13,384 bases of DNA from the sequence record MK327931.1; one strand, written 5' to 3'. The translations under genes and the position numbers were made by a program. The stretch's first letter is position 1. The number at the start of each line of letters is the position of its first letter. The notes beneath the pieces were generated by a model. The model was not told the origin of the DNA. It worked only from the letters and a program-made list of their open reading frames with translations, and searched no databases. This document shows, in pieces, positions 883 through 13,179 of the stretch.

Positions 883-1262
883 TTAATAGGATACTCCTTT
901 CCTTGTACTATATATGACAAAATCCATCCGTAATGAATAGGATGATTTTTGTCTGAATCAGGAATAAAATATAAAGCTGTACTTGGATTATGACTGAATA
1001 AATCTTTATTGTCAAATGTAAAATGTGATAATATAATTTTCCTTGCACTTGGACGAATAACATTCTTAACACTGAACTCTGAACCTTTGTATTTCTCCGA
1101 TAATTCAAATAATGCATCTGTAATTAAATCACTGATCTCTTGGATTACAAAATTCTGATAAAATGCATTAATCTCTTTTAACTCTGTATACAATTCACTT
1201 CTGGTATTCAAAAGAAATATTACTTTTTTAAGATCCTGAACTATTTCTGGATTCATATTCAT
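870..1262 (-). CDS. Hypothetical protein (130 aa)
   Basis: ORF track. Same strand and packing as its neighbours. Confidence 0.8.
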   Translation of the reverse strand: MNMNPEIVQDLKKVIFLLNTRSELYTELKEINAFYQNFVIQEISDLITDALFELSEKYKGSEFSVKNVIRPSARKIILSHFTFDNKDLFSHNPSTALYFIPDSDKNHPIHYGWILSYIVQGKEYPIKWKD

Positions 1263-1494
1263 TTATCTCATTCTGTAACTTAAGCATCAAAATTTGCATA
1301 TTAATTTTTTGTAAAAGGTGCTTGATAAATTTCTGTGCCATTTCTTCTTGTTCTTTTGTACCAAGATAAAATAACAGATTAAATTCTGATAATCGCAAAG
1401 AAAAATCTTCATCACCACCCTTTAAACAAAAATCCCTGTACTTTGTAGCGTACAAATATTGGTTTACCTTTTTATAATACCCTGTGTTTTGCAT
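1228..1494 (-). CDS. Family A paralog A31
   Basis: Motif YLGTKEQEEMAQKFIKHL; GGAG 5 nt before the ATG. Confidence 0.85.
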   Translation of the reverse strand: MQNTGYYKKVNQYLYATKYRDFCLKGGDEDFSLRLSEFNLLFYLGTKEQEEMAQKFIKHLLQKINMQILMLKLQNEINEYESRNSSGS

Positions 1495-1682
1495 ACTATC
1501 TCCGTTCGCAACGAATTTATATAATAATGAACAAATTGTTCTTGTGAACGTGTTCCAAGAAAAATAAACATATCAAACTCTGTTGTTTTTAAATTCAATG
1601 CATCTTTTGTAAAATTCCTGTTGAATTCCCTGTACTTTTGGGTCTTCCATTCTTGATTAATTGTCTTGTATATCGATTTCAA
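1464..1682 (-). CDS. Family A paralog A30 (TTG start)
   Basis: Motif FLGTRSQEQFVHYYINSL; GGGAG upstream of the TTG. Confidence 0.85.
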   Translation of the reverse strand: MKSIYKTINQEWKTQKYREFNRNFTKDALNLKTTEFDMFIFLGTRSQEQFVHYYINSLRTEIVCKTQGIIKR

Positions 1683-1977
1683 TGATTCTCCCTGATGTAC
1701 CTTGTATTAGCTTATCATACATATCGAGCATCACTTTTTGAATACTAATTAGTACTGGCATCGTGCAAATATCAATGTCGTATACTAAGCTGTACTGGAA
1801 TAATTCATCTTCCTGCATTTGTACTAAATTAGGTAAAGGATAATTGTCTGCCTCTTCATCCTGGTACTTGAAATGCATAACACCATCCTTTTTGTACAAA
1901 AGAATGTCAATATCACCTAACTCATCAGCATAACCAAAAATACATATACTCGATGTTTTTGCTATATTAAATTTCAT
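1657..1977 (-). CDS. Family B paralog B3
   Basis: Motif EDELFQYSLVYDI. Start moved to the ATG at 1977 (ATGA overlap, GAGGTGGAG upstream). Confidence 0.85.
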   Translation of the reverse strand: MKFNIAKTSSICIFGYADELGDIDILLYKKDGVMHFKYQDEEADNYPLPNLVQMQEDELFQYSLVYDIDICTMPVLISIQKVMLDMYDKLIQGTSGRIIEIDIQDN

Positions 1978-2219
1978 CTCCACCTCTCTCCGTCAGCACA
2001 AGAGTACTGGTACGTTGTCGTTAGGGTAGGGACCATGTTTGTAATGGGCATATTATTAACAATAACGGTAACAGGCATAAGAATCGTCTCTACTCTACTC
2101 TGTCCTGTCCTTGTACAATTCATCTTCTGCATTTCATCTGAATCCATGAAATACAATACAAATGGTGCAATCCCAAGAACAATACACAAGACGATAAGGA
2201 AATTTAAAAAATTTAACAT
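1974..2219 (-). CDS. Small predicted membrane-anchored protein (81 aa)
   Basis: N-terminal hydrophobic stretch (FLIVLCIVLGIAPFVLYF) followed by a Thr/Val/Pro-rich segment bracketed by two Cys. Has its own promoter. Confidence 0.8.
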   Translation of the reverse strand: MLNFLNFLIVLCIVLGIAPFVLYFMDSDEMQKMNCTRTGQSRVETILMPVTVIVNNMPITNMVPTLTTTYQYSCADGERWR

Positions 2220-2248
2220 AATTTTTACCCTATGATTAACGTTAGTGT

Positions 2249-2277
2249 ACTATATCAGTAATGAAAAGTACTGTCAA
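2249..2277 (-). promoter_or_regulatory. Sigma70-type promoter
   Basis: TTGACA-17 nt-TATAGT with a TG extended -10, immediately after the stop of 2279..2683. AGTACT abuts the -35. Confidence 0.8.
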
Positions 2278-2278
2278 G

Positions 2279-2683
2279 CTAGTATTGCACTGTTCTAATG
2301 AAAGTACCTTTACTCATGGATTTAAGCTTATGAACCTCTTCCTGCATACCCTTAATTAACCCTAAAGGTATAGGTAAATCATGTACTAAGCTGTACTGAA
2401 AGTATTCTTCTTCAGATAAAGTACTAACATCTGGAACGCCAATTTTAGTTATATAATCTTGATGTGTTGACCAATAAATTATATCTTCAGTACTATTGTA
2501 CTCCCCATATACTGAACAATATTGATGAATATCTTTCCTGTACCCTTGAGCAATAAAGAACTTATCTAATGCATTACCAGCATTAATAGAATTTACTTCG
2601 ATTGTCACAGTACTTGAGCTTGTATAACTCTTAATATTATCAGTACTCTTAATACTCAACGATGTGTTCTTCATAATCACCAT
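2279..2683 (-). CDS. Family B paralog B2
   Basis: Motif STLSEEEYFQYSLVHDL; AGGAG upstream. Confidence 0.85.
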   Translation of the reverse strand: MVIMKNTSLSIKSTDNIKSYTSSSTVTIEVNSINAGNALDKFFIAQGYRKDIHQYCSVYGEYNSTEDIIYWSTHQDYITKIGVPDVSTLSEEEYFQYSLVHDLPIPLGLIKGMQEEVHKLKSMSKGTFIRTVQY

Positions 2684-2993
2684 TAGGCTCCTGTTTAGAT
2701 TCTTTCATTAGTACTATCATCTTATGTACTAATGGCATAGGGAACTCTAAATCCCATACTAATGATTCCTGGAAGTATTCCTCTGGTGATAAAGTACTTA
2801 AATCTTTAATATCAACGTGCTTGTATATTTTATTTTCGTAATTAACAAATGATATATATAAATCACTAACATAAGAATCATAGGTAATTGTGAATGGCTT
2901 ACCCTTGTAATCCATTACATCTCTACATAGACTACTTTTGATATATGTATGTTCAAATGATTTATATACCTTGAGTTGTATATTAGTTTTCAT
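2649..2993 (-). CDS. Family B paralog B1
   Basis: Motif STLSPEEYFQESLVWDL. Confidence 0.85.
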   Translation of the reverse strand: MKTNIQLKVYKSFEHTYIKSSLCRDVMDYKGKPFTITYDSYVSDLYISFVNYENKIYKHVDIKDLSTLSPEEYFQESLVWDLEFPMPLVHKMIVLMKESKQEPNGDYEEHIVEY

Positions 2994-3225
2994 ATTTCTC
3001 TTTATTAGCTTGTTTGGTTTTATAGTGAATTAAATCTATTAATGTAATCAAGTACAACGTCAAATAGTACTCTTGTTGATCTGTACCTAATGATACAAAG
3101 AACTTGTGCTCATAGATTAAAACCTGTTTCTCTTCAAATGGACATTTAATCCTCTGTATAGGCTTAAGTAAATGATAGTACTTATTAAATCTATGATACA
3201 TTTCTAGTTCTGTCAGTACTTTCAT
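2983..3225 (-). CDS. Family A paralog A29
   Basis: SLGTDQQEYYLTLYLITL. Start reassigned to MKVLT (3225) by family consensus; the track start is 3258. Confidence 0.85.
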   Translation of the reverse strand: MKVLTELEMYHRFNKYYHLLKPIQRIKCPFEEKQVLIYEHKFFVSLGTDQQEYYLTLYLITLIDLIHYKTKQANKEKYEN

Positions 3226-3226
3226 A

Positions 3227-3448
3227 TTAAACACATACTCCATTAGCTGTAGCATCACGTAAAGCTGTCAAATACTTCTGTACGGCTTGCTCTTGCTTAT
3301 TTGTACCTAAAAGTATATACATCCATAATTCACTGTAATGTACATCTTGTGTATAAGGGTCATTGTAACTTTTTGATAATATAGCATCAAATTCAGATGC
3401 ATGAACCCTTGTGAACTTAAGAATATCTTGTTGTGTTATGATTCTCAT
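3227..3448 (-). CDS. Family A paralog A28
   Basis: LLGTNKQEQAVQKYLTAL; ATGA overlap. Confidence 0.9.
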   Translation of the reverse strand: MRIITQQDILKFTRVHASEFDAILSKSYNDPYTQDVHYSELWMYILLGTNKQEQAVQKYLTALRDATANGVCV

Positions 3449-3660
3449 ATCTTTTCCTGTACAATCTGTATAAGAATACCTATGTGTGAATTAACAGTTC
3501 TCTCTTGATGCTGTGTTCCTAAGAGTGTCAGTACTATCATATCTGAACGCAAAAGATTTTTTTCAAGTTCACTTATATCAGTTCTTGAATCAAGTGCCAT
3601 ATATTTGTGATTATTCTTCCTGAATAGTGCCAAGTACTCTTGGTTTGATATTATCTTCAT
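3445..3660 (-). CDS. Family A paralog A27
   Basis: LLGTQHQERTVNSHIGIL; ATGA overlap. Confidence 0.9.
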   Translation of the reverse strand: MKIISNQEYLALFRKNNHKYMALDSRTDISELEKNLLRSDMIVLTLLGTQHQERTVNSHIGILIQIVQEKI

Positions 3661-3872
3661 AGTTTACTTTTAATTTCCATTAAAAGTGCTCTAATATGCT
3701 CATTGACAAATCGCTCTTGGGAATCTGTGTCTAGGGTGAGAAGCATTCTTAAATCGGAACCTCTGATGGTATATTCTAAATCATTCTTTGATTCTCGCAT
3801 AAGTTTCTGAAAGGATGAGAAGTGTAATCCCATGAGTTCAATGTATTCTGCTGTTCCTAGTGGTTTTGGCAT
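3657..3872 (-). CDS. Family A paralog A26 (G>D variant)
   Basis: TLDTDSQERFVNEHIRAL; ends IKSKL. Confidence 0.9.
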   Translation of the reverse strand: MPKPLGTAEYIELMGLHFSSFQKLMRESKNDLEYTIRGSDLRMLLTLDTDSQERFVNEHIRALLMEIKSKL

Positions 3873-4078
3873 TTTAGTTCAATAGCTCGTTTAAGTGTAT
3901 TAATATAATCTTTAATGTCGTGTTCTTGATAGTTCGTTCCAAGGGTAGCTAGAACATAGACTTCATTTCTCTTAATAATTTTATCCATATCTGGTATATC
4001 TGATGTGTTAATGACGAAGAGCTTCAAAAACAGTCCATTTATGATTGTTAGGTATTCTACATCGGTAATGATTTTCAT
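3857..4078 (-). CDS. Family A paralog A25
   Basis: TLGTNYQEHDIKDYINTL. Start moved to MKIIT (4078, ATGA overlap). Confidence 0.9.
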   Translation of the reverse strand: MKIITDVEYLTIINGLFLKLFVINTSDIPDMDKIIKRNEVYVLATLGTNYQEHDIKDYINTLKRAIELKCQNH

Positions 4079-4296
4079 TTGCATTTGCATTTTCTCAGTA
4101 CTGATTCTTTAAGTTCATTGATGTAGCACTCTACATATTCTTCTTGTAGGTTTGTTCCGATATGTAACAGTACTCTTAAATCTGCTCTCAGTACTTCTTT
4201 GTCATCTTCATCTATATCAGACAGTGTTATGTTTAAGAATTTACTTGAACTCTCTATAAGTAATATTACTGAATCACCTTTGCTTAAAATTTTCAT
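4075..4296 (-). CDS. Family A paralog A24
   Basis: HIGTNLQEEYVECYINEL. Confidence 0.9.
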   Translation of the reverse strand: MKILSKGDSVILLIESSSKFLNITLSDIDEDDKEVLRADLRVLLHIGTNLQEEYVECYINELKESVLRKCKCK

Positions 4297-4504
4297 AATC
4301 TCTTTTTGCTTTCCTCGCCAAAAGGTACATATACGATTCTTCGTATTGTGCTTGGTAGTTTGTGTTTAAGAGTCGAAACAACTTCTGTTCTGCTAGAACT
4401 AGTTGCTTATCTTCATAACAACGGTAGCGTATCAACTTTTTGTATTCGATGTTGATTACATCCATTACTATAAGCCCATGTTCATCATCTGTCAAGTGTT
4501 TCAT
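4274..4504 (-). CDS. Family A paralog A23 (G>N variant)
   Basis: LLNTNYQAQYEESYMYLL; starts MKHLTDDE like A9. Confidence 0.9.
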   Translation of the reverse strand: MKHLTDDEHGLIVMDVINIEYKKLIRYRCYEDKQLVLAEQKLFRLLNTNYQAQYEESYMYLLARKAKRDYENFKQR

Positions 4505-4743
4505 GCATTTTTTCTTTTTCTTATATGTTTAGTTAAAAGGTATATTAGTTTTCTGATGTATTCTTCTTGATAGTTTGTTCCTAAGAGTGCAAGAAGTTTT
4601 GCTTCAACTAAAGCTAGTTGTCGTTCTTCGAATGTGTGTTCCAGTATGTACTTGGGGTTTGATTTTTTAGCGTAAGCACTATTAGTCTTCATTACAATCT
4701 TATGATATTCATTAGCTGTTAGGATTTTTAAATACTTGATCAT
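4501..4743 (-). CDS. Family A paralog A22
   Basis: LLGTNYQEEYIRKLIYLL. Confidence 0.9.
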   Translation of the reverse strand: MIKYLKILTANEYHKIVMKTNSAYAKKSNPKYILEHTFEERQLALVEAKLLALLGTNYQEEYIRKLIYLLTKHIRKRKNA

Positions 4744-4963
4744 GTATCTTTTCCTTTATAGAGAATTTAAGATATCGAAGCATACTTTCAATGTAATACT
4801 CTTGTCTGTCAGTGCCAAGAAAGTACATGAGTTGAATGTATAAAACTTCTGCACTCCTTTCCGCTGGAGACTTGTTTGTGTCGTTTGGAAGTTGATTTGT
4901 ATGTTTTCTTGATTTAATTAGTCGTTCTTTTAACTCATCGTCTGTTAAGTATTTCATTTTCAT
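4712..4963 (-). CDS. Family A paralog A21
   Basis: FLGTDRQEYYIESMLRYL; close to A20 (PAERSAEVL shared). Confidence 0.9.
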   Translation of the reverse strand: MKMKYLTDDELKERLIKSRKHTNQLPNDTNKSPAERSAEVLYIQLMYFLGTDRQEYYIESMLRYLKFSIKEKIHDQVFKNPNS

Positions 4964-5189
4964 TTACTTTTTCCTTAATAGTGATTTTAAGATATCTAAT
5001 CATACGTGCAACATATTCCTCTTGTCTATCAGTTCCCAGAAGATATGGTAGTGATTGGAATAATACTTCTGCACTCCTTTCTGCTGGGGTTTGGTTTAGG
5101 TCAATTGGACGTTTATTGGTATATCTCTTGGCACGAACTAATCTCTCGACGTATTCATTATAGGTTAAGTATATCATTTCATTTTGCAT
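4935..5189 (-). CDS. Family A paralog A20
   Basis: LLGTDRQEEYVARMIRYL. Confidence 0.9.
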   Translation of the reverse strand: MQNEMIYLTYNEYVERLVRAKRYTNKRPIDLNQTPAERSAEVLFQSLPYLLGTDRQEEYVARMIRYLKITIKEKVNENEILNRR

Positions 5190-5409
5190 TTACTTTTTCC
5201 TTAATACTCATTATAAGATGTTCAATCATATTTTGAACCATAAATTCTTGTTTATCAGTTCCAAGAACGTATGGTAGCTTCTGAAACAATACATTTGCAG
5301 ATACTTCAGATATTGATTGATTTGGAACGAACTTAAGAGTAATGTTTTTGGTTTTTAACATCTTCTCTTGAAATTCTTCATTCGTTAAGTATATCATTTC
5401 ATTTTGCAT
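5179..5409 (-). CDS. Family A paralog A19
   Basis: VLGTDKQEFMVQNMIEHL; N-terminus MQNEMIYLT identical to A20. Confidence 0.9.
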   Translation of the reverse strand: MQNEMIYLTNEEFQEKMLKTKNITLKFVPNQSISEVSANVLFQKLPYVLGTDKQEFMVQNMIEHLIMSIKEKVNAK

Positions 5410-5625
5410 TTACATTCTCTCATATATATTTTGGGTTAAAAGGTCAATCCAGATTTCCACATATCGTTGTTGGTGTTGCGTCCCTAACAGTACACCCAAC
5501 TTAGCTTCACACTCTAATAACAATCTGGTTTTGTATGGTAGACTTTGGAATCCTATAGTAGCATCTAATTTGGTAATTGCATAGTTGATTCGGATGAATC
5601 TTTCTTGCAATGTGATGTTGTTCAT
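5410..5625 (-). CDS. Family A paralog A18
   Basis: LLGTQHQQRYVEIWIDLL. Confidence 0.9.
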   Translation of the reverse strand: MNNITLQERFIRINYAITKLDATIGFQSLPYKTRLLLECEAKLGVLLGTQHQQRYVEIWIDLLTQNIYERM

Positions 5626-5885
5626 TTCTTAGTACACCTCAGTGGTTGGGTCATTTGATAAAAGTACAGCTTACCTTTGATTTCCAGTAGTAACTCCGCG
5701 ATTAAGCGATTTACTTCTGTATCTTGATAGTTTGTTCCTAAGAATACACCCATCTTTAACTCACGCATCATAATCATTTTCTTACTGTGTTGAATTTCTG
5801 GGTTGTGATAGATTGTATTACGTTTGTGCGTAATTTTTGTCATACGCTCGGTATATTCATCTTTACTTAAATTGATCATTTGCAT
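5622..5885 (-). CDS. Family A paralog A17
   Basis: FLGTNYQDTEVNRLIAEL. Start moved to MQMINLSK (5885; GAGGT 8 nt upstream). Confidence 0.9.
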   Translation of the reverse strand: MQMINLSKDEYTERMTKITHKRNTIYHNPEIQHSKKMIMMRELKMGVFLGTNYQDTEVNRLIAELLLEIKGKLYFYQMTQPLRCTKK

Positions 5886-5914
5886 GTTCATCAACCTCAC
5901 ATTTATTTTCAATA

Positions 5915-6154
5915 CTATTCTTTAGTTTGTAGATATAGTTTTCTTCCAATGTATCTCTTAAGTGCGATTATGTATTCATCTACATAATACTCCTGATAGT
6001 TTGTTCCTATGAATGCACCCACCTTTAACTCAAGTTTCATAATCATCTTATTTCCGTGTTTAATGACTTCTCCGTGATGGATTTCATTAAGTCCAGGTGC
6101 AATTTTCACCAGGCGTTCTTTATATTTTGCTTGAGATAATTTAATCATTTTCAT
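5915..6154 (-). CDS. Family A paralog A16
   Basis: FIGTNYQEYYVDEYIIAL. Start moved to MKMIKLS (6154; AAGGGT upstream). Confidence 0.9.
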   Translation of the reverse strand: MKMIKLSQAKYKERLVKIAPGLNEIHHGEVIKHGNKMIMKLELKVGAFIGTNYQEYYVDEYIIALKRYIGRKLYLQTKE

Positions 6155-6155
6155 G

Positions 6156-6386
6156 TTAATTACCCTTACATTTATTTTCAATACTATTCATGAGTTCTAT
6201 AAGATAGTTTTCTACCTTACCTTCCTGATAGTTAGTCCCTAGGAAGTTGCACAACACGGCTTCTATGATTTTGATTTTCCTGATATCAGGCTTCAATCTT
6301 TTGTTATTGAATATTTGAATCCTTATATCTCTGGATGCATTTAAACGTTTTTGATATTCATGGTAAGTTAAATGAATCATTTTCAT
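6156..6386 (-). CDS. Family A paralog A15
   Basis: FLGTNYQEGKVENYLIEL. Confidence 0.9.
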   Translation of the reverse strand: MKMIHLTYHEYQKRLNASRDIRIQIFNNKRLKPDIRKIKIIEAVLCNFLGTNYQEGKVENYLIELMNSIENKCKGN

Positions 6387-6601
6387 TTACGTTTAACCTC
6401 TCGCTGGAGGGCATCAATTAACATCAGTACAGCATTCTCTTGATAGTTTGTTCCTAAGACTGAAAGCATCTTTATCTCATTTACTAAAATCAACTTCTTT
6501 GAGGGTTCAATAATGTGACTATCATAAACGGCCTTACGTGCTGGATAAGTTTTCGCCAGTATAACATAAAATTCGTCTTTACTTAAATTAATCATTTGCA
6601 T
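6383..6601 (-). CDS. Family A paralog A14
   Basis: VLGTNYQENAVLMLIDAL. Confidence 0.9.
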   Translation of the reverse strand: MQMINLSKDEFYVILAKTYPARKAVYDSHIIEPSKKLILVNEIKMLSVLGTNYQENAVLMLIDALQREVKRK

Positions 6602-6810
6602 TTACTTTTAACCTCTTTCTGTAGAGCGTCAATCCATAGATCTACATACATTTGTTGATAGTTTGTGCCTAAGAGTGCACCTACATAGAGTTCAGTTACT
6701 AGTGCGTGCTTAAGGTTAGCTTGGATGCTCTTATCGCTTGATATCATTCTCCTTCTGCTTCCACATGTTTTCAGGAGTCTGATGTATTCAAAGCCTTGTA
6801 AATTTCTCAT
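6592..6810 (-). CDS. Family A paralog A13
   Basis: LLGTNYQQMYVDLWIDAL. Confidence 0.9.
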   Translation of the reverse strand: MRNLQGFEYIRLLKTCGSRRRMISSDKSIQANLKHALVTELYVGALLGTNYQQMYVDLWIDALQKEVKSKCK

Positions 6811-7022
6811 ATTTTGGATACCACCTTGTTACGTAAGGAACTTAATAATACGTCAGTGTAGATGTTTTGATAGTTTGTCCCTACGAATACACCCAACTTC
6901 ATTTCAGCTATTATAACACATTTGTCCTCTTGTGCAATAGATTTGTTTAACACAATACTATACACTTTTGATTTGATAGTTTGTAACCTCCAATGATACT
7001 GATACTCATTAAGGATTATCAT
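6807..7022 (-). CDS. Family A paralog A12
   Basis: FVGTNYQNIYTDVLLSSL. Confidence 0.9.
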   Translation of the reverse strand: MIILNEYQYHWRLQTIKSKVYSIVLNKSIAQEDKCVIIAEMKLGVFVGTNYQNIYTDVLLSSLRNKVVSKI

Positions 7023-7257
7023 TCTCTTTCCTCCAGATTTCGGTTCTCATGTGTTGGCAGTGTGCATCAATATATTGCTCTATCGATCTGGCGATTGCTG
7101 TTTTATCAGTGCCTGTCATCAGTACAAGCATCTCGGCCTCACAGTGAAGTAAACGCATGATATCATAGGGTAATATTTCAGATACCGTGTCATAGTGTTT
7201 CTGTGCCAGTGTCTGCAATAGTTTACAATACATTTTGTGATTTAGTCTTTGTCGCAT
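7009..7257 (-). CDS. Family A paralog A11 (divergent)
   Basis: EAEMLVLMTGTDKTAIARSIEQYIDAH; lacks the conserved Q. Start placed at MRQRL (7257). Confidence 0.75.
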   Translation of the reverse strand: MRQRLNHKMYCKLLQTLAQKHYDTVSEILPYDIMRLLHCEAEMLVLMTGTDKTAIARSIEQYIDAHCQHMRTEIWRKENDNP

Positions 7258-7493
7258 TGTTTCTTCCATTCTCTTCTGGCTTGGCGGGTTTTATCTGATA
7301 TTTCGTTTCTCAATGCAGAGATATATCGTAGAGTGAACAGTTCTTGATAGTTAGTCCCTATGAATTTATTAAGATATACATCAGCGTTGACGATATCAGC
7401 TTCACGGGAATTATAAAGTTTATTGTTAGTGCGAAGGGTGTTTAGAAGAGAGAAGAGGGCAGTCTGATACTCAGTGCTTGATAAAGTTTTCAT
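7242..7493 (-). CDS. Family A paralog A10
   Basis: FIGTNYQELFTLRYISAL. Start moved to MKTLSSTEY (7493). Confidence 0.9.
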   Translation of the reverse strand: MKTLSSTEYQTALFSLLNTLRTNNKLYNSREADIVNADVYLNKFIGTNYQELFTLRYISALRNEISDKTRQARREWKKQCDKD

Positions 7494-7728
7494 ATTTTTC
7501 CACAATTCGTTCATTTAGTTTTATCTGTATAAGATCCATTAGTTGTTCAAGATAATCGGTACAATATTTCTCTTGATATTGGGTTCCCACAAAGTACAGC
7601 AACCATAGCTCATGAACTTTAACTTTCATCTCGTTCCATGAAAGTGCATCGTCATCGTAGATTACTCTTGCTTCTGGGGTGAGCTTTCGAATTCTAAGTG
7701 AATATTCATCGTCCGTCAAGTGTTTCAT
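7471..7728 (-). CDS. Family A paralog A9
   Basis: FVGTQYQEKYCTDYLEQL. Confidence 0.9.
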   Translation of the reverse strand: MKHLTDDEYSLRIRKLTPEARVIYDDDALSWNEMKVKVHELWLLYFVGTQYQEKYCTDYLEQLMDLIQIKLNERIVEKYENFIKH

Positions 7729-7883
7729 TTACATTTATCCCTTATTAGATTTGTGAGTGCAACTATGTGTTCATGGATATAAAAATTTTGATGAGAAGTT
7801 CCAAGAAAGTACAGCATCCATCCCTCACTCTGCTCGACTTCTAGTTTAGTATCGAGTTGGTCAGATATGTTAATGAAAACCAT
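7725..7883 (-). CDS. Family A paralog A8 (short, 52 aa)
   Basis: Not in the track. Manual translation MVFINISDQLDTKLEVEQSEGWMLYFLGTSHQNFYIHEHIVALTNLIRDKCK; TAATG and ATGA overlaps on its two sides. Confidence 0.85.
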   Translation of the reverse strand: MVFINISDQLDTKLEVEQSEGWMLYFLGTSHQNFYIHEHIVALTNLIRDKCK

Positions 7884-8107
7884 TAGTTCTTTTCCTTTCT
7901 TTCTATTTGTTTCATAAGAACATCGATATACTCACCCGCAAACCTATTCTGATACTGCGTCCCCATGAATTCCAACATCCATACTTCAGCAACCTTTTCT
8001 TCAATTTCAGTCCATTGTAAGTACATCATAGTGAAGTAAATGGTGTTCTCTTTTTTTCTGGCACTCTTAGCACGGGCCTCGTATTCAAAGTTATTAATGA
8101 TGTTCAT
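7883..8107 (-). CDS. Family A paralog A7
   Basis: FMGTQYQNRFAGEYIDVL. Start moved to MNIIN (8107). Confidence 0.9.
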   Translation of the reverse strand: MNIINNFEYEARAKSARKKENTIYFTMMYLQWTEIEEKVAEVWMLEFMGTQYQNRFAGEYIDVLMKQIERKEKN

Positions 8108-8321
8108 TACATTTGTCCATAATGTAATTCTTGAGTGCAACTATGTGTGCAATAACATACTCTTCCTGGAAGTTCGTCCCCAGTACAGCCAACATGCGTA
8201 CATCGGTGGTGTTTATCTTGTGTTCCAATCGAGTTAAACCTTTTATTTGTAAAAGGGTATCGTATTTGTTTAATGCATCAATGATAATTCTCATCTTCTC
8301 AATATTACTTAAATGTTTCAT
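8094..8321 (-). CDS. Family A paralog A6
   Basis: VLGTNFQEEYVIAHIVAL. Confidence 0.9.
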   Translation of the reverse strand: MKHLSNIEKMRIIIDALNKYDTLLQIKGLTRLEHKINTTDVRMLAVLGTNFQEEYVIAHIVALKNYIMDKCNEHH

Positions 8322-8530
8322 AGTTTACTCTTAATGTAGTTCTGAAGTTCAATTAAGTATTTCCCTACATAATACTCCTGAAAGTCTGTATCCAAAAATG
8401 CACCCAAAAGTAAATCCTTCTCCATTGCCCTTGATAAGTTAAGGTCTGCATTTGAAAGGTATATAAGTAATATTTCAGTCTGGACAGAATTAAAACGTTT
8501 CTTATATTCTTCAGGTGTTAATATAATCAT
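8318..8530 (-). CDS. Family A paralog A5 (G>D variant)
   Basis: FLDTDFQEYYVGKYLIEL. Confidence 0.9.
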   Translation of the reverse strand: MIILTPEEYKKRFNSVQTEILLIYLSNADLNLSRAMEKDLLLGAFLDTDFQEYYVGKYLIELQNYIKSKL

Positions 8531-8742
8531 AATTTGCTCCTGATGTATTTCTCAAGAGATGACAAATACTTTTCCTCATAATACTCCTGATAGTCTGTTC
8601 CCAAGAATGCACCCATAAGTATTTCATTTTCCAATACCTCGGCTAAGTTTAAATCAGACGTCTCTTCGTATATTATGAGGATTTCAAGTTGTCTGGCAGC
8701 GATGCGTTCAGTATATTGATATGAGTTTTCTATAATAATCAT
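8527..8742 (-). CDS. Family A paralog A4
   Basis: FLGTDYQEYYEEKYLSSL; close to A5. Confidence 0.9.
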   Translation of the reverse strand: MIIIENSYQYTERIAARQLEILIIYEETSDLNLAEVLENEILMGAFLGTDYQEYYEEKYLSSLEKYIRSKL

Positions 8743-8948
8743 ATTTTACTCTTAATATCTTCTATTAAAAATCGAATCCATTCTTCAACATAATCTTCCT
8801 GATGGTTTGTGTTCAGTACAGCCAACATGCGGATCTCTGCTCTTGCAACTTCAATTTCAGTTTTAGGCAGGTCTTTGCTGATATCCACCATTAAGTCCAT
8901 GTATTTCAAGATAAGACCGTATGATTGGGTTCGTGTTATAGTTTTCAT
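8739..8948 (-). CDS. Family A paralog A3 (G>N variant)
   Basis: VLNTNHQEDYVEEWIRFL. Confidence 0.9.
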   Translation of the reverse strand: MKTITRTQSYGLILKYMDLMVDISKDLPKTEIEVARAEIRMLAVLNTNHQEDYVEEWIRFLIEDIKSKI

Positions 8949-9145
8949 TGTTTCCTCGTGGACAATATTTTATTTTTCAATGTATCCATATATTGCCACA
9001 CCCATCTACCCTGATAGTTTGTTCCCAATGTAATCAAAAGGTATAACTCCATTCGTTCTACGTGTGTGTCTGTGTTGTAAATCTTTACGTAGTTTTTACG
9101 TAACAGTGATTGATATTCTTCTTTATTTAAAATACGCATTTTCAT
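8945..9145 (-). CDS. Family A paralog A2
   Basis: TLGTNYQGRWVWQYMDTL. Confidence 0.9.
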   Translation of the reverse strand: MKMRILNKEEYQSLLRKNYVKIYNTDTHVERMELYLLITLGTNYQGRWVWQYMDTLKNKILSTRKQ

Positions 9146-9339
9146 AGTTTACTCGTTATATCTTCAATTAAATACCAAATCCAATCGTTGACATACCTTT
9201 CCTGAAAGTTAGTTCCAATGAATAGTGCCATAATTAATTCACGCTTATAGGCAATACCACGGTCATGGGACTTATACATTATCATAGCCATGTTATTGAT
9301 AAGTCTTTCGTGGTGCTGTTCTTTAGTTAAAATACGCAT
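9142..9339 (-). CDS. Family A paralog A1 (first gene of the array)
   Basis: FIGTNFQERYVNDWIWYL. Start moved to MRILTKEQ (9339; GGGAG upstream; the track start abuts the -10 box). Confidence 0.9.
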   Translation of the reverse strand: MRILTKEQHHERLINNMAMIMYKSHDRGIAYKRELIMALFIGTNFQERYVNDWIWYLIEDITSKL

Positions 9340-9369: not shown

Positions 9370-9397
9370 ATTTTATACGATTCATATAAAAAGTCAA
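9370..9397 (-). promoter_or_regulatory. Predicted promoter of the family A operon
   Basis: TTGACT-16 nt-TAAAAT, 30 nt upstream of the A1 start. Confidence 0.65.
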
Positions 9398-9494
9398 TAA
9401 CATTTTATTCGTAATACCCCTTTATCGAAGTCGCTAAGGTTACCCGCCCTTTAGCCCCCTACGCATTTTGCCATAGTCCAATCCCTTTTATTTC

Positions 9495-9560
9495 AAAAAA
9501 GTCAAGGGATTACCTATGCATTTTTTTAACGCATAATTTTAAAAACGCCTTGACTTTTTT
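9495..9560. terminator. Long inverted repeat, possible bidirectional terminator
   Basis: AAAAAAGTCAAGG (9495-9507) and CCTTGACTTTTTT (9548-9560) form a perfect 13 bp inverted repeat ending in a T-tract on both strands, enclosing a second 8 bp stem (9515-9535). Confidence 0.5.
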
Positions 9561-9588
9561 CTGAATCAGTACTAGATCCCTTTACGCA

Positions 9589-9798
9589 TTAATCCTTCGT
9601 TACGCTAACGATTATCTGTGTATCCCCGTAGTCCTGCCATACTTCCACGCCATCGGTCGCCCTGGTTAGTCGTGCTGTCATCTGCTTAATGGTCTTAGGC
9701 TTTAGTGGAACCTGTTGCAGTACTGTACGCATAGCATCATTGACGTTATCATGTACGCCTGCAATAGTACCTAGAACGCTGTATACTGTATAGAACAT
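9589..9798 (-). CDS. Hypothetical protein (69 aa)
   Basis: ORF track; AGGAGG 8 nt upstream. Confidence 0.85.
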   Translation of the reverse strand: MFYTVYSVLGTIAGVHDNVNDAMRTVLQQVPLKPKTIKQMTARLTRATDGVEVWQDYGDTQIIVSVTKD

Positions 9799-9822
9799 AT
9801 GTATGCCCTCCTGATATAGTTA

Positions 9823-9842
9823 AGGCCGCTACAAGGCGGCCT
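9823..9842 (-). promoter_or_regulatory. Leader/intergenic hairpin
   Basis: AGGCCGC-6 nt-GCGGCCT, a perfect 7 bp stem just upstream of the RBS. Confidence 0.6.
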
Positions 9843-9866
9843 ATGATGTTTGGTGATGTGTAACGC

Positions 9867-10268
9867 TTACAGTCCTAAGATAGTGCGTGCTTCGTTACGT
9901 TCCGTACACAGCTGCATGATGTGAGCAAGTAAGTCCTTGCTAATGTATCCGGTGTTCATAGCTTCACGAATAGATACATCATACGCACCGAACCCCGTGC
10001 GAACGATACGCACATCATTCAGGTTAGTATTATAGATACCGCCGAGATCAACGGCTTCGAATACTACATCAACAGAATATTCATTGTTGCCATCGTGGAA
10101 GTTTTCCAGTGCAATAGTATTGGATACCGCCCAACGTTTGCAGTTTCCAATGATGCGGCACTGTTCCGGTTGGATAGTACCATTACTTACAGCGTACTCC
10201 AGTGCATCTTTACCAAAAGTCCGAGCCAGTACTAAAACGTCAGCGAAGGAATTGATTGAGAAGGTCAT
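9867..10268 (-). CDS. Hypothetical protein (133 aa)
   Basis: Start moved to MTFSINS (10268; AAGGAG upstream). The track extension runs through the leader hairpin. Confidence 0.85.
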   Translation of the reverse strand: MTFSINSFADVLVLARTFGKDALEYAVSNGTIQPEQCRIIGNCKRWAVSNTIALENFHDGNNEYSVDVVFEAVDLGGIYNTNLNDVRIVRTGFGAYDVSIREAMNTGYISKDLLAHIMQLCTERNEARTILGL

Positions 10269-10288
10269 GATAAAACTCCTTAATTTAG

Positions 10289-10350
10289 GAGGGAGAACCA
10301 TTTCCCCCTCTCTATGTAAAACATTATACTTGATTCTAAGTACTATGCAA
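10289..10350 (-). promoter_or_regulatory. Cassette module: promoter plus leader hairpin
   Basis: TTGCAT-16-TATAAT (10350-10323), then hairpin GAGGGGGAA-ATGG-TTCTCCCTC (10310-10289). Confidence 0.85.
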
Positions 10351-10357
10351 GTACTTT

Positions 10358-10690
10358 TTACATTTTAATACCTGGATTCAGGTAGCGGTGAGATCCATAT
10401 TCTGGATCGGTTTCGGTCCAGTACTGTAAATCGATAGTACCTTTCGCGTTAATCTTGTCTACCAGCTTATTCATCTTAGTGTATACTACGTCAGCATCGA
10501 TGCGTTTAAAGCCAGTAGCTTTAGTGAAGTAGTAGTGATTTGCTTCACTATCATTAAGGATATACCGAGCACCGTTTGCAGTCTGTGCGATAATGATTGA
10601 GTATTCTACTTCCCGATCCAGACCGTCGATGAATACAGATGAAACATTGGTACGGATGAAAGCTTTAACGATAGCGATTGAAGTACTCAT
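10358..10690 (-). CDS. Hypothetical protein (110 aa)
   Basis: ORF track; AGGAG RBS; C-terminal IDLQYWTETDPEYGS motif. Confidence 0.85.
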   Translation of the reverse strand: MSTSIAIVKAFIRTNVSSVFIDGLDREVEYSIIIAQTANGARYILNDSEANHYYFTKATGFKRIDADVVYTKMNKLVDKINAKGTIDLQYWTETDPEYGSHRYLNPGIKM

Positions 10691-10710
10691 TTTGAATCTC
10701 CTAACTTTGT

Positions 10711-10772
10711 GGGCCGTCGCACCATTGCCGCCCTACGAGATACATTATTGCAGTACTGATATACTTTGTCAA
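10711..10772 (-). promoter_or_regulatory. Cassette module, variant
   Basis: TTGACA-17-AATAAT; the upstream half is identical to the 12723 and 13217 copies; imperfect hairpin GGGCGGCA-ATGG-TGCGACGGCCC. Confidence 0.7.
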
Positions 10773-10885
10773 TACTTTTTTTATTAATAGTTTTCACCCC
10801 ACCAGCAGATAGTTACTCACCGTTATTAACTATATATTTTAGATACACTCCTGCACCCAGTGGGCTAGTTTTTGTCTATGCGTAT

Positions 10886-10914
10886 ATAATAGCAAAGGGA
10901 CTGACCGGAGTCAA
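10886..10914 (-). promoter_or_regulatory. Orphan sigma70-type promoter
   Basis: TTGACT-17-TATTAT with a TG extended -10, overlapping a terminator-like hairpin. Confidence 0.6.
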
Positions 10915-10925
10915 TCCCTTTTTTT
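10894..10925. terminator. Intrinsic terminator-like hairpin
   Basis: Minus strand: GGGAUUGAC-UCCG-GUCAGUCCC (UNCG-type tetraloop) followed by UUU; plus strand followed by T7. Lies 12 nt after the stop of 10937..11137. Confidence 0.7.
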
Positions 10926-10936
10926 ATTCTTTTTTG

Positions 10937-11137
10937 TTAGATGATTCTCCAATCTTCTACGATCATGGTAAGATAACGGACCATCGATTCAAGTGATTCG
11001 AATTCCCGATAGTCTGCCGCTCCACCAGCGGTACAAGTACAGCCGATTAAACCATTTTGTAATTCCTTAATCTGTACATCGATAAGGTTGGCTTTAGCTT
11101 CTTTCAGTACTTCAACCAGGGCGATAGCGATAGACAT
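10937..11137 (-). CDS. Hypothetical protein (66 aa)
   Basis: ORF track; GGAG RBS; has its own promoter module. Confidence 0.85.
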   Translation of the reverse strand: MSIAIALVEVLKEAKANLIDVQIKELQNGLIGCTCTAGGAADYREFESLESMVRYLTMIVEDWRII

Positions 11138-11160
11138 AATGTTTTACTCCAAACTATTGA

Positions 11161-11220
11161 CGGGAGAACTATTCCCCCGCTCTATGTAAAACATTATACA
11201 TTACTGGTTAGTACTGTCAA
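11161..11220 (-). promoter_or_regulatory. Cassette module: promoter plus leader hairpin
   Basis: TTGACA-16-TATAAT (11220-11193); hairpin CGGGGGAA-TAG-TTCTCCCG. 11161-11199 is identical to 12136-12174. Confidence 0.9.
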
Positions 11221-11226
11221 ATAGTT

Positions 11227-11484
11227 TTATGAAATATCTTCGATGTAGTCGGCCCATTTCATTTTTTCAGTACTGTCAATGGCTACCGGATTATTTGGAT
11301 CAAACCATTCACCATTCCCGCAATACATACCCACGGCAACGGTTTTATATCCATCCTGTGCAGTACTCCACGACATAGCACGATAGATATGGCCTTTAAC
11401 TGGTTGCAATACTGGTAATGTTTTATGGTCTTCTACGTAGGCCATAGCTTGAGGATTTACCCGATATTGTGTGAACTGTTCCAT
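11227..11484 (-). CDS. Hypothetical protein (85 aa)
   Basis: ORF track; AAGGGG RBS. Confidence 0.85.
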   Translation of the reverse strand: MEQFTQYRVNPQAMAYVEDHKTLPVLQPVKGHIYRAMSWSTAQDGYKTVAVGMYCGNGEWFDPNNPVAIDSTEKMKWADYIEDIS

Positions 11485-11512
11485 TATGTTTCCCCTTGTA
11501 GTTAGTAAAGTT

Positions 11513-11541
11513 ATTACATCAGTACTATCAAGCTATGTCAA
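11513..11541 (-). promoter_or_regulatory. Promoter without a leader hairpin
   Basis: TTGACA-17-TGTAAT; AGTACT both in the spacer and upstream of the -35. Confidence 0.65.
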
Positions 11542-11560
11542 TAGTACTGAAATAAAACTT

Positions 11561-11785
11561 TTAGATTAGATTATTGATGCCGTTGATGGTAGACTCGCTT
11601 TCTTCTTTCTCCCATTGGCGGTAGTACTTCCATGCTTCATGATATGTGGCGATTAGTTCATCTTTTTGATCCTGAGTACATGCCAGTACTGAATCACGGT
11701 GAGCGGTTTTATAGATAGAATCGAATGATTTCTTCTCTTCTGCCAGGTTAGCTACTTCCCGCATCAGTTCATCAAAGTTAGCCAT
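11561..11785 (-). CDS. Hypothetical helical protein (74 aa)
   Basis: ORF track; AAGGAG RBS. Confidence 0.85.
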   Translation of the reverse strand: MANFDELMREVANLAEEKKSFDSIYKTAHRDSVLACTQDQKDELIATYHEAWKYYRQWEKEESESTINGINNLI

Positions 11786-11803
11786 TTTATTACTCCTTTT
11801 AGT

Positions 11804-11860
11804 GGGGGAGGATATCTCCCCCTATGCAAAACATTATACTTTGTTTTAGTTATTATGCAA
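11804..11860 (-). promoter_or_regulatory. Cassette module: promoter plus leader hairpin
   Basis: TTGCAT-16-TATAAT (11860-11833); hairpin GGGGGAG-ATATC-CTCCCCC. Confidence 0.85.
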
Positions 11861-12116
11861 GTACTTTTTTCATATAAAGATTATATTCTACACCGCCGTA
11901 ACCTTCTACGATGATATGTTTTGCGTTATCACGTTTGCACATAGTGAAACCGTTGTTGATGTGTTCTGCATTTTCCAGGGCGACATCACCGATAGCGGCA
12001 CATACGGCACTAATAACAGTATTCCGCAAAGTACTGGTATCATTAGCGGTCATAGTAGTTTGCAGTACTACGTTGTCGTATACGTGTGCATTGATAGTGA
12101 TTTCGATAGTGTTCAT
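11853..12116 (-). CDS. Hypothetical protein (87 aa)
   Basis: ORF track; AGGAG RBS; its last codons overlap the next promoter. Confidence 0.85.
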   Translation of the reverse strand: MNTIEITINAHVYDNVVLQTTMTANDTSTLRNTVISAVCAAIGDVALENAEHINNGFTMCKRDNAKHIIVEGYGGVEYNLYMKKVLA

Positions 12117-12134
12117 GGTGTATCTCCTGGACTG

Positions 12135-12195
12135 GCGGGAGAACTATTCCCCCGCTCTATGTAAAACATTATACGTTAATCTAACTACAATGCAA
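12135..12195 (-). promoter_or_regulatory. Cassette module: promoter plus leader hairpin
   Basis: TTGCAT-16-TATAAT (12195-12168); hairpin GCGGGGGAA-TAG-TTCTCCCGC. Confidence 0.9.
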
Positions 12196-12202
12196 GTACT
12201 TT

Positions 12203-12663: not shown

Positions 12664-12685
12664 AATTTTGTTTCCTTTTAGTATC

Positions 12686-12744: not shown

Positions 12745-12750
12745 ATACTT

Positions 12751-13158: not shown

Positions 13159-13179
13159 GATTTTATTCCTTATTGTATT

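What the first reader, a model, noticed from the sequence alone, without database searches (positions are those of the whole stretch)
1228..9339. Tandem array of 31 hyperdiverse paralogous mini-proteins (GTxxQ family), 29 of them contiguous
Seen: every ORF from 2983 to 9339, plus two at 1228-1682, shares one layout. It runs M-x-x-L-[ST]-x-x-E-Y, a highly variable middle, E-x-x-[ML]-x-x-x-[LIV]-G-T-[NDQ]-[YHF]-Q-E-x-Y-V-x-x-[YW]-[IL]-x-x-L, and a basic tail. Nearly all copies are intact at similar length although the N-terminal halves barely align. Inference: a small helical bundle with a conserved core or turn and a diversified surface, kept as a repertoire. That pattern fits an arms-race library (binders or decoys for host defence sensors, toxins or regulators, each tuned to a different allele or host) or a hetero-oligomer with many variable subunits. 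Gene accordions are established in poxviruses. I do not recognise this family or a described function for it.
Basis: partly seen in the sequence, partly recalled or inferred. Interest (0 to 1): 0.92.

Follow-up and report, generated by a model that had tools for sequence, protein, structure and literature searches.

The report
Jumbo-phage array of 31 mini-proteins
A giant E. coli phage carries 31 old, very different but intact copies of one tiny four-helix protein, packed head to tail beside its terminal repeat; the array has been mentioned in print for sister phages, but nobody knows what it does.

Summary
The window is 100% identical to Escherichia phages vB_EcoM_G17 and Sharanji (Asteriusvirus, about 350-370 kb). 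Thirty-one minus-strand ORFs (two at 1228-1682, 29 contiguous at 2983-9339) form one family of 52-88 aa. Thirty pass a leave-one-out profile test strongly and one passes weakly.

The family is PHROG 4148, function unknown. It has no Pfam or PDB relative. A typical member is predicted as a compact four-helix domain (pLDDT 97.5). The invariant G-T-x-x-Q sits in the loop before the last helix.

The copies are old: median identity between paralogs is 25% and the maximum is 52%. They are syntenic across nine relatives, which carry 22-31 copies each. They are intact and under purifying selection (dN/dS 0.33-0.40). This is a stable repertoire, not a recent accordion.

The array starts 98 nt inside the unique DNA next to the 20.7-kb terminal repeat. 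That repeat carries perfect sigma-70 consensus promoters on the same strand. No member appears in the phAPEC6 virion proteome.

My best reading is inferred, not shown: an early operon of about 30 cytoplasmic binders on one scaffold, used for host takeover or counter-defence.

The array was already noted for 121Q (Hua 2017) and phAPEC6 (Wagemans 2020). It is therefore known but uncharacterised.

The parts
9437..13384 (-). Part of the 20,668-bp direct terminal repeat of the G17 record. It holds small genes with consensus sigma-70 promoters, upstream of the array and on the same strand.
   Evidence: G17 record positions 1-3948 are 100% identical to window 9437-13384. There are three perfect TTGACA-N16-TATAAT sites at 11193-11220, 12717-12744 and 13211-13238, against 0.06 expected.
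9370..9397 (-). Sigma-70-like promoter candidate of the array (TTGACT-16-TAAAAT, 10 of 12). It lies in unique DNA just inside the repeat boundary.
   Evidence: This is a consensus match only. AAGGGAG lies six nt before the ATG at 9339.
9142..9339 (-). Family copy 1, first in transcription order, 65 aa.
   Evidence: Leave-one-out score 47.1 bits. Orthologs 58-100% identical.
8945..9145 (-). Family copy 2, 66 aa.
   Evidence: Leave-one-out score 44.1 bits.
8739..8948 (-). Family copy 3, 69 aa.
   Evidence: Leave-one-out score 60.6 bits.
8527..8742 (-). Family copy 4, 71 aa.
   Evidence: Leave-one-out score 47.6 bits. 49% identical to its neighbour 8318-8530.
8318..8530 (-). Family copy 5, 70 aa (D-T in place of G-T).
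   Evidence: Leave-one-out score 58.6 bits.
8094..8321 (-). Family copy 6, 75 aa.
   Evidence: Leave-one-out score 60.0 bits.
7883..8107 (-). Family copy 7, 74 aa.
   Evidence: Leave-one-out score 52.4 bits.
7725..7883 (-). Family copy 8, short at the N-terminus, 52 aa.
   Evidence: Leave-one-out score 47.2 bits. Reciprocal orthologs only in PBECO4 and SD-15_S21.
7471..7728 (-). Family copy 9, 85 aa.
   Evidence: Leave-one-out score 68.0 bits.
7242..7493 (-). Family copy 10, 83 aa.
   Evidence: Leave-one-out score 46.4 bits.
7009..7257 (-). Family copy 11, a divergent member, 82 aa, with an insertion after G-T and no Q.
   Evidence: Leave-one-out score only 10.5 bits against 6.5 shuffled. It is syntenic and 63-91% identical in all eight relatives.
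6807..7022 (-). Family copy 12, 71 aa.
   Evidence: Leave-one-out score 51.3 bits.
6592..6810 (-). Family copy 13, 72 aa. This is the member that was modelled.
   Evidence: Leave-one-out score 66.0 bits. AlphaFold2 pLDDT 97.5, pTM 0.83.
6383..6601 (-). Family copy 14, 72 aa.
   Evidence: Leave-one-out score 63.2 bits.
6156..6386 (-). Family copy 15, 76 aa.
   Evidence: Leave-one-out score 65.4 bits.
5915..6154 (-). Family copy 16, 79 aa.
   Evidence: Leave-one-out score 68.2 bits. 74% DNA identity to the next copy over 226 nt.
5622..5885 (-). Family copy 17, 87 aa.
   Evidence: Leave-one-out score 65.7 bits.
5410..5625 (-). Family copy 18, 71 aa.
   Evidence: Leave-one-out score 45.5 bits.
5179..5409 (-). 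Family copy 19, 76 aa.
   Evidence: Leave-one-out score 55.6 bits.
4935..5189 (-). Family copy 20, 84 aa.
   Evidence: Leave-one-out score 58.8 bits. 52% identical to 4712-4963, the closest pair in the genome.
4712..4963 (-). Family copy 21, 83 aa.
   Evidence: Leave-one-out score 63.0 bits.
4501..4743 (-). Family copy 22, 80 aa.
   Evidence: Leave-one-out score 56.1 bits.
4274..4504 (-). Family copy 23, 76 aa (N-T in place of G-T).
   Evidence: Leave-one-out score 32.2 bits.
4075..4296 (-). Family copy 24, 73 aa.
   Evidence: Leave-one-out score 57.3 bits.
3857..4084 (-). Family copy 25, 75 aa.
   Evidence: Leave-one-out score 58.7 bits.
3657..3872 (-). Family copy 26, 71 aa (D-T in place of G-T).
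   Evidence: Leave-one-out score 43.9 bits.
3445..3660 (-). Family copy 27, 71 aa.
   Evidence: Leave-one-out score 56.9 bits.
3227..3448 (-). Family copy 28, 73 aa.
   Evidence: Leave-one-out score 43.2 bits.
2983..3225 (-). Family copy 29, last of the contiguous block, 80 aa.
   Evidence: Leave-one-out score 43.1 bits.
1464..1682 (-). Detached family copy, 72 aa, TTG start, not annotated in the G17 record.
   Evidence: Leave-one-out score 42.2 bits. Orthologs 83-100% identical in 121Q, phAPEC6 and UE-S1.
1228..1494 (-). Detached family copy, 88 aa, with a long last helix.
   Evidence: Leave-one-out score 26.5 bits. AlphaFold2 pLDDT 87.

Best explanation
SHOWN. The region is an old, lineage-restricted tandem expansion of one mini-domain of about 70 aa, PHROG 4148. 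The predicted fold has four helices, with a short bridge between the N-terminus and the G-T loop.

What is conserved between copies is a hydrophobic stripe and the G-T-x-x-Q junction before the last helix. I read T-x-x-Q as a helix N-capping box, preceded by a glycine C-cap; that reading is inference. Everything else on the surface differs from copy to copy.

Each copy is itself conserved, syntenic and intact in related phages, under purifying selection.

The 29 contiguous genes sit on one strand. They overlap or abut at 24 of 28 junctions, and 12 of those are ATGA. They begin 98 nt inside the unique DNA that adjoins the terminal repeat. They are co-oriented with a battery of perfect sigma-70 consensus promoters in that repeat and have a weaker sigma-70-like promoter of their own.

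INFERRED.
- The host RNA polymerase transcribes the array early as one long operon.
- Translational coupling yields about 30 small cytoplasmic, non-virion proteins together.
- Each protein uses its own surface to bind a different partner, so the array is a fixed repertoire of binders or inhibitors for host takeover or counter-defence.

The anatomy and evolution are well supported. The timing is plausible. The binding function is a guess by analogy.
For: Family and layout:
- establish the family and its motif.
- Fold: pLDDT 97.5, pTM 0.83, helices at 6-14, 17-25, 31-45 and 52-71.
- Conserved columns of the last helix are spaced 4-3-4-3; the others have entropy above 3 bits.
- pI ranges from 4.3 to 9.9 across copies.

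Old duplication:
- Median identity between paralogs is 25%.
- The six closest pairs are all neighbours (permutation p 1e-4).
- TRF finds no DNA repeat.

Maintenance of each copy:
- Nine relatives carry 22-31 full copies and 1-2 partial ones.
- The order is syntenic.
- There are 33 groups at 50% identity, 15 of them in all nine phages.
- Pooled dN/dS is 0.33-0.40, and equal in the N-terminal and C-terminal parts.
- Columns that vary between paralogs still show pN/pS 0.49 among orthologs.

Expression context:
- The terminal repeat boundary is at window 9437.
- There are 9 perfect consensus promoters on the coding strand in the repeat part of L001, against 0.08 expected, and none in the array.
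- The array has a candidate promoter of its own and a Shine-Dalgarno sequence.
- Shine-Dalgarno-like motifs precede 19 of 31 starts, against a background of 0.11. The junction overlaps are counted.
- No terminator is predicted inside the array.

Not structural: none of the orthologs gp462-gp489 is among the 62 virion proteins of phAPEC6, although a 4.7-kDa protein was detected there.
Against: - No interaction, target or phenotype is known for any member.
- No transcript or proteome time course exists for this genus, so 'early' rests on promoter consensus and position alone.
- The overall count of promoter-like sites in the window is not above chance. The array's own promoter matches only 10 of 12.
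- There is no sign of positive selection at the gene level. Only 6 of 156 ortholog pairs have dN/dS above 1.
- No similarity was found to any known anti-defence or host-takeover protein by sequence or fold. Foldseek is weak for small helical proteins, so this is not strong evidence.
- Conserved polar residues (E, N/D, Y, E, K) could mark a shared binding site rather than only structure.
Confidence: 0.4

Rival explanations
1. Adaptor family. The conserved C-terminal half (the E...LGT[ND]YQE..Y[VI]..L...I..K face) docks every copy onto one common phage or host machine. The variable N-terminal half brings a different target to it. This is how the F-box, BTB and ankyrin expansions of large eukaryotic viruses work.
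For: Several conserved positions are polar or aromatic, not only hydrophobic: E 22/31, [NDQ] 28/31, [YHF] 21/31, E 23/31, K 25/31. Conservation is concentrated in the second half of the protein. All copies would be made together from one operon.
Against: The protein is a single compact domain of about 70 aa, not two modules. Among orthologs the two halves have the same dN/dS. No candidate partner gene co-varies with the array in the loci examined. T-x-x-Q and G are explained more simply as helix caps (inference).
Confidence: 0.15
2. Nucleic-acid-binding regulators or nucleoid-type proteins. This would be a family of small DNA or RNA binders that tune phage or host gene expression, as was proposed for the ~35-copy zinc-ribbon expansion of Bacillus phage G.
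For: The helix-G-T-helix junction resembles a helix-turn-helix at first sight. 22 of 31 copies have a net positive tail. Median pI is 8.1. The phage G precedent is described in PMC7824862.
Against: No copy matches any Pfam helix-turn-helix or other DNA-binding family. No PDB sequence or fold match was found. About a third of the copies are acidic, with pI 4.3-6.1. The hydrophobic positions after the turn do not fit the canonical helix-turn-helix register (my reading of the alignment).
Confidence: 0.12
3. Subunits of one intracellular hetero-oligomeric assembly built from many paralogs.
For: The genes are co-transcribed and translationally coupled, which suits fixed stoichiometry. The core is conserved and the length is uniform at 65-88 aa.
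Against: Copy number differs from 22 to 31 between close relatives, and only 15 of 33 groups are universal. That is hard to reconcile with a fixed assembly. The monomer model is confident on its own. The proteins are not in the virion.
Confidence: 0.08
4. Filler DNA. Tandem duplicates were retained mainly because a larger capsid must be filled, which is the ratchet idea of Hua et al. 2017. The individual copies would have no function.
For: Hua et al. cite this very array in 121Q as evidence of genome growth by tandem duplication (PMC5646251). Neighbouring copies are the most similar.
Against: The frames are intact in nine genomes, with 22-31 full and 1-2 partial copies. dN/dS is 0.33-0.40, well below 1. 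The order is conserved. Shine-Dalgarno motifs are enriched before the starts. The predicted fold is very confident.
Confidence: 0.05

Closest known systems
The same array in Escherichia phages 121Q and phAPEC6 (Hua et al. 2017, mBio, PMC5646251; Wagemans et al. 2020, PMC7247149); PHROG family phrog_4148
   Same: It is an orthologous locus in the same genus. G17 copies have syntenic orthologs 41-100% identical in 121Q and phAPEC6. 30 of 31 copies hit phrog_4148.
   Different: The papers give one sentence each and call the genes 'very similar' or 'closely related'. In fact the paralogs share a median of 25% identity. I count 24-25 copies in the 121Q locus, not more than 30. No fold, selection analysis, position or function was reported.
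Lineage-specific expansion of a zinc-ribbon protein (~35 copies) in Bacillus phage G (Iyer et al. 2021, PMC7824862)
   Same: It is also a jumbo phage with a tandem family of some 30 small proteins of unknown role, read as genome growth by duplication.
   Different: The fold and the phage lineage are unrelated. The family here has no metal-binding cysteines.
Host-takeover module in the terminal redundancy of Bacillus phage SPO1, and the pre-early genes in the terminal repeat of coliphage T5 (from my own knowledge of these phages, not tested here)
   Same: These are blocks of small genes at a genome end, in or next to a long direct terminal repeat, driven by strong promoters for the host polymerase. 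Here there are 9 perfect consensus promoters in the repeat, and the array starts 98 nt beyond it.
   Different: Those modules are made of unrelated genes, not one expanded family. Their early timing was measured, whereas here it is inferred.
Poxvirus gene accordions
   Same: They are tandem copies of one gene in a large DNA virus, and copy number differs between relatives (22-31 here).
   Different: Accordions are recent, near-identical and transient. Here the closest pair in G17 is 52% identical, there are 0-1 recent duplicates per genome, and most copies are old orthologs.
Tandem arrays of diversified immunity proteins of polymorphic toxin systems, such as the SUKH superfamily (Zhang et al. 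2011, PMC3113570)
   Same: They are arrays of small, divergent paralogs on one scaffold, thought to neutralise different partners.
   Different: Those arrays are bacterial and of the alpha+beta SUKH fold. No copy here hits any Pfam family. The likeness is one of logic only.

Membership tests
PHROG phrog_4148 (phage protein family, unknown function) | Significant match to the family profile | tested here: met
   30 of 31 copies match, best E 9.3e-27. 16 of 31 also match phrog_28039.
One paralogous family within the window | Each copy is recognised by a profile built from the others | tested here: met
   The leave-one-out test gives 26-68 bits for 30 copies and 10.5 bits for 7009-7257, against at most 10.4 bits for shuffles.
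Gene accordion (recent adaptive amplification) | Near-identical tandem copies | tested here: not met
   Maximum paralog identity in G17 is 52% and the median 25%. TRF finds no array.
Gene accordion (recent adaptive amplification) | Copy number varies between close relatives | tested here: met
   Nine Asteriusviruses carry 22-31 full copies. The variation comes from scattered presence or absence of old copies, not from bursts of duplicates.
Arms-race (positively selected) family | dN/dS above 1 among orthologs, at least on the variable surface | tested here: not met
   Pooled dN/dS is 0.33-0.40, and 6 of 156 pairs exceed 1. Variable columns pooled give 0.49. Five single columns reach 1 or more, with no significance test.
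Helix-turn-helix DNA-binding proteins | Match to a known helix-turn-helix profile or fold | tested here: not met
   No consistent Pfam hit, no PDB sequence hit, and no Foldseek hit with E below 1.
Virion (structural) proteins | Detected in purified particles | tested here: not met
   The phAPEC6 virion table of 62 proteins has no entry between gp347 and gp549. The array orthologs are gp462-gp489.
Early genes transcribed by the host polymerase | Transcripts appear in the first minutes from sigma-70 promoters | not testable with these tools
   The only evidence is consensus promoters, position and strand. No transcriptome for the genus was found.
Known anti-phage defence proteins (PADLOC) | Match to a defence-system profile | tested here: not met
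   Only scattered single-copy hits appear, with E of 5.8e-4 or worse.
SUKH-type immunity protein arrays | SUKH domain | tested here: not met
   No Pfam family is matched consistently by any copy.

The most novel reading that the evidence does not exclude
The array is a hard-wired 'binder library'. About 30 surface variants of one otherwise unknown four-helix scaffold are made together in the first minutes of infection. Each neutralises a different host protein, whether a defence effector, a toxin or a housekeeping hub. A patch on the exposed face of the last helix (columns 68, 71 and 72, where pooled pN/pS reaches 1.0-1.5) would be the evolving contact site. That would make it the largest single-family host-takeover or counter-defence repertoire known in a phage.
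Probability: 0.3. Interest if true: 0.8.

Novelty: already known. Interest (0 to 1): 0.5.

Why it matters
About a tenth of the open reading frames in the leading 30 kb of these 350-kb phages belong to this one family, and nothing is known about it.

If the copies are target-specific binders, the family would give about 30 ready-made probes for host functions that a jumbo phage needs to silence. It would also offer a compact new scaffold for protein engineering.

The array also bears on how jumbo genomes grow. The data here show that the duplicates are old and individually maintained. That argues against the view that they are mere filler.

For people annotating Asteriusvirus genomes, which are used in phage-therapy studies, it explains a block of about 30 'hypothetical proteins'. 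It also flags an unannotated member.

Tried and rejected
- Pfam, PDB sequences and PADLOC: no consistent match.
- Foldseek against the PDB with two models: nothing with E below 1. Against BFVD it returned only members of the same family.
- The search for related loci with the 91-sequence alignment failed because no stretch was conserved enough.
- tblastn of the distant member P0187 against the phage collection: no match.
- P0167, a 1771-aa hit with 10 matched stretches, is a repetitive eukaryote-type protein. I rejected it as spurious.
- Rfam and tRNA scans of the window were empty.
- TRF found no DNA-level array.
- Literature searches for PHROG or locus-tag names, and for transcriptomes of the genus, found nothing.
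- Pfam and PHROGs on 17 flanking genes gave only 'unknown function'.
- I could not obtain model coordinates, so burial of the conserved residues was judged from helical periodicity only.
- I did not scan the remaining roughly 340 kb of the G17 genome for further copies.
- Orthology between the uncultured-lineage array (L012) and G17 could not be resolved, because identity is about 30% in every direction.

Full report
IDENTITY OF THE WINDOW

The 13,384 bases are 100% identical to Escherichia phage vB_EcoM_G17 (MK327931.1, 340714-354097) and to phage Sharanji. They are 90-98% identical to other Asteriusvirus jumbo coliphages and Salmonella phages of 310-386 kb. Every gene in the record is annotated as a hypothetical protein. 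Rfam and tRNA scans are empty.

THE OBSERVATION

All real genes lie on the minus strand. Thirty-one ORFs align almost without gaps: two at 1228-1682 and 29 contiguous at 2983-9339 (A1).

- T 31/31, Q 30/31, G 27/31.
- The later L 30/31.
- N-terminal L 20/31 and E 20/30.

In a leave-one-out profile test, 30 copies score 26-68 bits, against at most 10.4 bits for shuffled versions. ORF 7009-7257 is marginal at 10.5 bits but is syntenic and conserved in relatives.

Three further details:
- One copy (7725-7883) is short, at 52 aa.
- ORF 1464-1682 has a TTG start and is missing from the G17 annotation.
- The 29-kb G17 locus holds no other member apart from one short partial match.

WHAT THE PROTEINS ARE

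No copy has a consistent Pfam match. There is no PDB sequence relative and no PADLOC match. Thirty of 31 copies hit phrog_4148, whose function is unknown.

With a 91-sequence alignment, AlphaFold2 models the typical member 6592-6810 at pLDDT 97.5 and pTM 0.83. The model has helices at 6-14, 17-25, 31-45 and 52-71, and a bridge between residue 2 and residue 49. The outlier 1228-1494 gives pLDDT 87.

The G-T-x-x-Q motif is the loop and first turn before the last helix. I read it as a glycine C-cap followed by a T-x-x-Q capping box; this is inference.

In the last helix the conserved columns (70, 74, 77, 81, 84) are spaced 4-3-4-3. The columns between them carry more than 3 bits of entropy. This is the pattern of a conserved buried stripe under a free surface. 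The pI ranges from 4.3 to 9.9.

Foldseek finds no PDB analogue: best E is 2.5 and TM is below 0.55. In BFVD it finds only members of the same family.

EVOLUTION

Paralogs within G17 share a median of 25% identity, with a maximum of 52%. The six closest pairs are all neighbours, and neighbours are more alike than expected (permutation p 1e-4).

TRF sees no tandem repeat at the DNA level. The DNA encoding the motif recurs every 215-270 nt, and three adjacent pairs keep 70-74% DNA identity. The family therefore arose by tandem duplication long ago.

Nine Asteriusviruses carry 22-31 full copies and 1-2 partial matches each. The order is syntenic, with ortholog identities from 41% to 100% in a mosaic pattern. 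Their 257 copies fall into 33 groups at 50% identity. Fifteen groups are present in all nine phages. Within a genome only 0-1 pair exceeds 60% identity.

Selection measurements:
- Pooled Nei-Gojobori dN/dS for orthologs is 0.33-0.40.
- It is equal in the variable N-terminal part and the conserved C-terminal part.
- It is 0.09-0.18 in the upstream flank and 0.15-0.42 in the equally plastic downstream flank.
- Six of 156 gene pairs exceed 1.
- By alignment column, paralog-conserved columns give 0.24 and paralog-variable ones 0.49.
- Columns 29, 68, 71, 72 and 88 reach 1 or more, without a significance test.

Synonymous divergence in the array is two to three times that of the upstream flank in the more distant comparisons. 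The alleles are therefore old or exchanged between lineages.

An exhaustive profile search of 1.84 billion representative proteins finds only 92 clusters. Named hits are Asteriusvirus proteins, or 'E. coli' contigs of phage-genome size.

Distant members occur in two other lineages:
- RaK2-like Klebsiella phages, for example RaK2_00362. RaK2 has about five weak, dispersed members.
- An uncultured related lineage with 12 contiguous and 4 dispersed members. These are about 30% identical to everything else.

CONTEXT AND EXPRESSION SIGNALS

Position 1 of the G17 record equals window 9437, and the next 3,948 bases are identical to the window. Window 9437-13384 therefore lies in the 20,668-bp direct terminal repeat as deposited. 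The first start codon of the array (9339) is 98 nt inside unique DNA.

The homologous region of the RaK2-like phage Muenster is annotated as a terminal repeat predicted by PhageTerm.

The repeat part carries perfect TTGACA-N16-18-TATAAT promoters. There are three in the window and nine in L001, all on the coding strand, against 0.06-0.08 expected. None lies in the array.

The array has a weaker candidate promoter, TTGACT-16-TAAAAT, at 9370-9397, and a good Shine-Dalgarno sequence. Twenty-four of 28 junctions overlap, 12 of them as ATGA, and the largest gap is 29 nt. Shine-Dalgarno-like motifs precede 19 of 31 starts, against a background of 0.11. No terminator is predicted inside the array.

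None of the phAPEC6 orthologs (gp462-gp489) is among its 62 virion proteins, although a 4.7-kDa protein was detected there. No transcriptome of the genus was found.

INTERPRETATION

Shown: an old, stable, individually maintained repertoire of about 30 surface variants of one compact helical scaffold. It is encoded as a tightly coupled gene block next to the promoter-rich terminal repeat, and it is not part of the virion.

Inferred: early transcription by the host polymerase, and a role as target-specific binders for host takeover or counter-defence (confidence about 0.4).

Rival explanations:
- An adaptor family with a common docking face.
- Nucleic-acid binders.
- A hetero-oligomeric assembly.
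- Filler DNA. The selection data argue against this one.

COMPARISON WITH WHAT IS KNOWN

Hua et al. [quoted passage not shown] Wagemans et al. [quoted passage not shown] A 2026 review repeats the point (PMC13282480).

The array is therefore already known as an object, but its fold, age, selection, position and function were not described.

It is not a poxvirus-type accordion. In logic it resembles the zinc-ribbon expansion of phage G, immunity-protein arrays, and the terminal-repeat takeover modules of SPO1 and T5. The SPO1 and T5 comparison rests on my own knowledge.

VERDICT

This is a real and striking feature of a known kind that has already been mentioned in print. Its function is open. 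Interest is moderate, at 0.5.

Consensus lines printed by the alignment tool were not used.

Noticed in passing
window 9437-13384 (= G17 record 1-3948): The right-hand third of the window belongs to the 20,668-bp direct terminal repeat of the G17 record. The boundary falls in the 250-nt gap just upstream of the array.
   Followed up: yes
window 11193-11220, 12717-12744, 13211-13238; L001 19193-27665: Nine perfect sigma-70 consensus promoters lie on the coding strand, most with the same spacer ending AGTACTG before TATAAT. An intergenic cassette of about 100 nt is repeated at 12651-12750 and 13147-13243 (91% identity).
   Followed up: partly
window 2649-2993, 2279-2683, 1657-1977 (minus strand): A second, smaller paralogous family sits between the two parts of the array. 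Its members share a motif of the type EEYFQ-x-SLV-x-DL. BLASTP gives E 5e-10 for the first pair and 0.017 for the third member. It matches phrog_13866, function unknown.
   Followed up: partly
window 1464-1682 (minus strand): This intact family member has a TTG start, overlaps 1228-1494 by 31 nt, and is not annotated in the G17 record. Its orthologs are 83-100% identical in 121Q, phAPEC6 and UE-S1.
   Followed up: partly
protein hits: Many family proteins are filed under 'Escherichia coli' on contigs of 345-360 kb. These are whole jumbo-phage genomes inside bacterial isolate assemblies, which points to a carrier state or contamination.
   Followed up: no
P0001 (ENA metagenome contig, 154 aa): This is a natural single ORF that fuses the counterparts of two adjacent copies (4501-4743 and 4274-4504). 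It shows that neighbouring copies can merge.
   Followed up: partly
L012 (ENA ERZ14189038 NODE_1, 101 kb) 9777-12787 and four dispersed genes: An uncultured relative of RaK2-like phages carries its own array of 12 contiguous and 4 dispersed members. A ParE-like gene lies upstream (L012 5375-5626). The homologous regions of K64-1 and Muenster are annotated with a YafQ-like toxin and a protein kinase.
   Followed up: partly
alignment A1 columns 68, 71, 72 (last helix), 29 and 88: These are the only columns where pooled pN/pS among orthologs reaches 1.0-1.5 (3.1 at column 88, in the ragged tail). Columns 68, 71 and 72 would lie on one exposed face of the last helix. No significance test was done.
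   Followed up: partly
whole window: Megablast also hits 6 Campylobacter, 1 Shigella, 1 Klebsiella and about 40 further Escherichia phage records outside the genus. These probably match short shared early genes or promoter cassettes in the repeat part. The Campylobacter labels are unexplained.
   Followed up: no
window 2500-9000 versus 9500-13384: G+C is 30-37% across the array and 38-43% in the terminal-repeat part. The coding strand of the array is strongly A-rich, with AT skew down to -0.26 on the plus strand.
   Followed up: no
121Q locus L002: I find 24 full and 1 partial family members in the 121Q locus, whereas Hua et al. [quoted passage not shown] Either further copies lie elsewhere in the genome or the published count was looser.
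   Followed up: no
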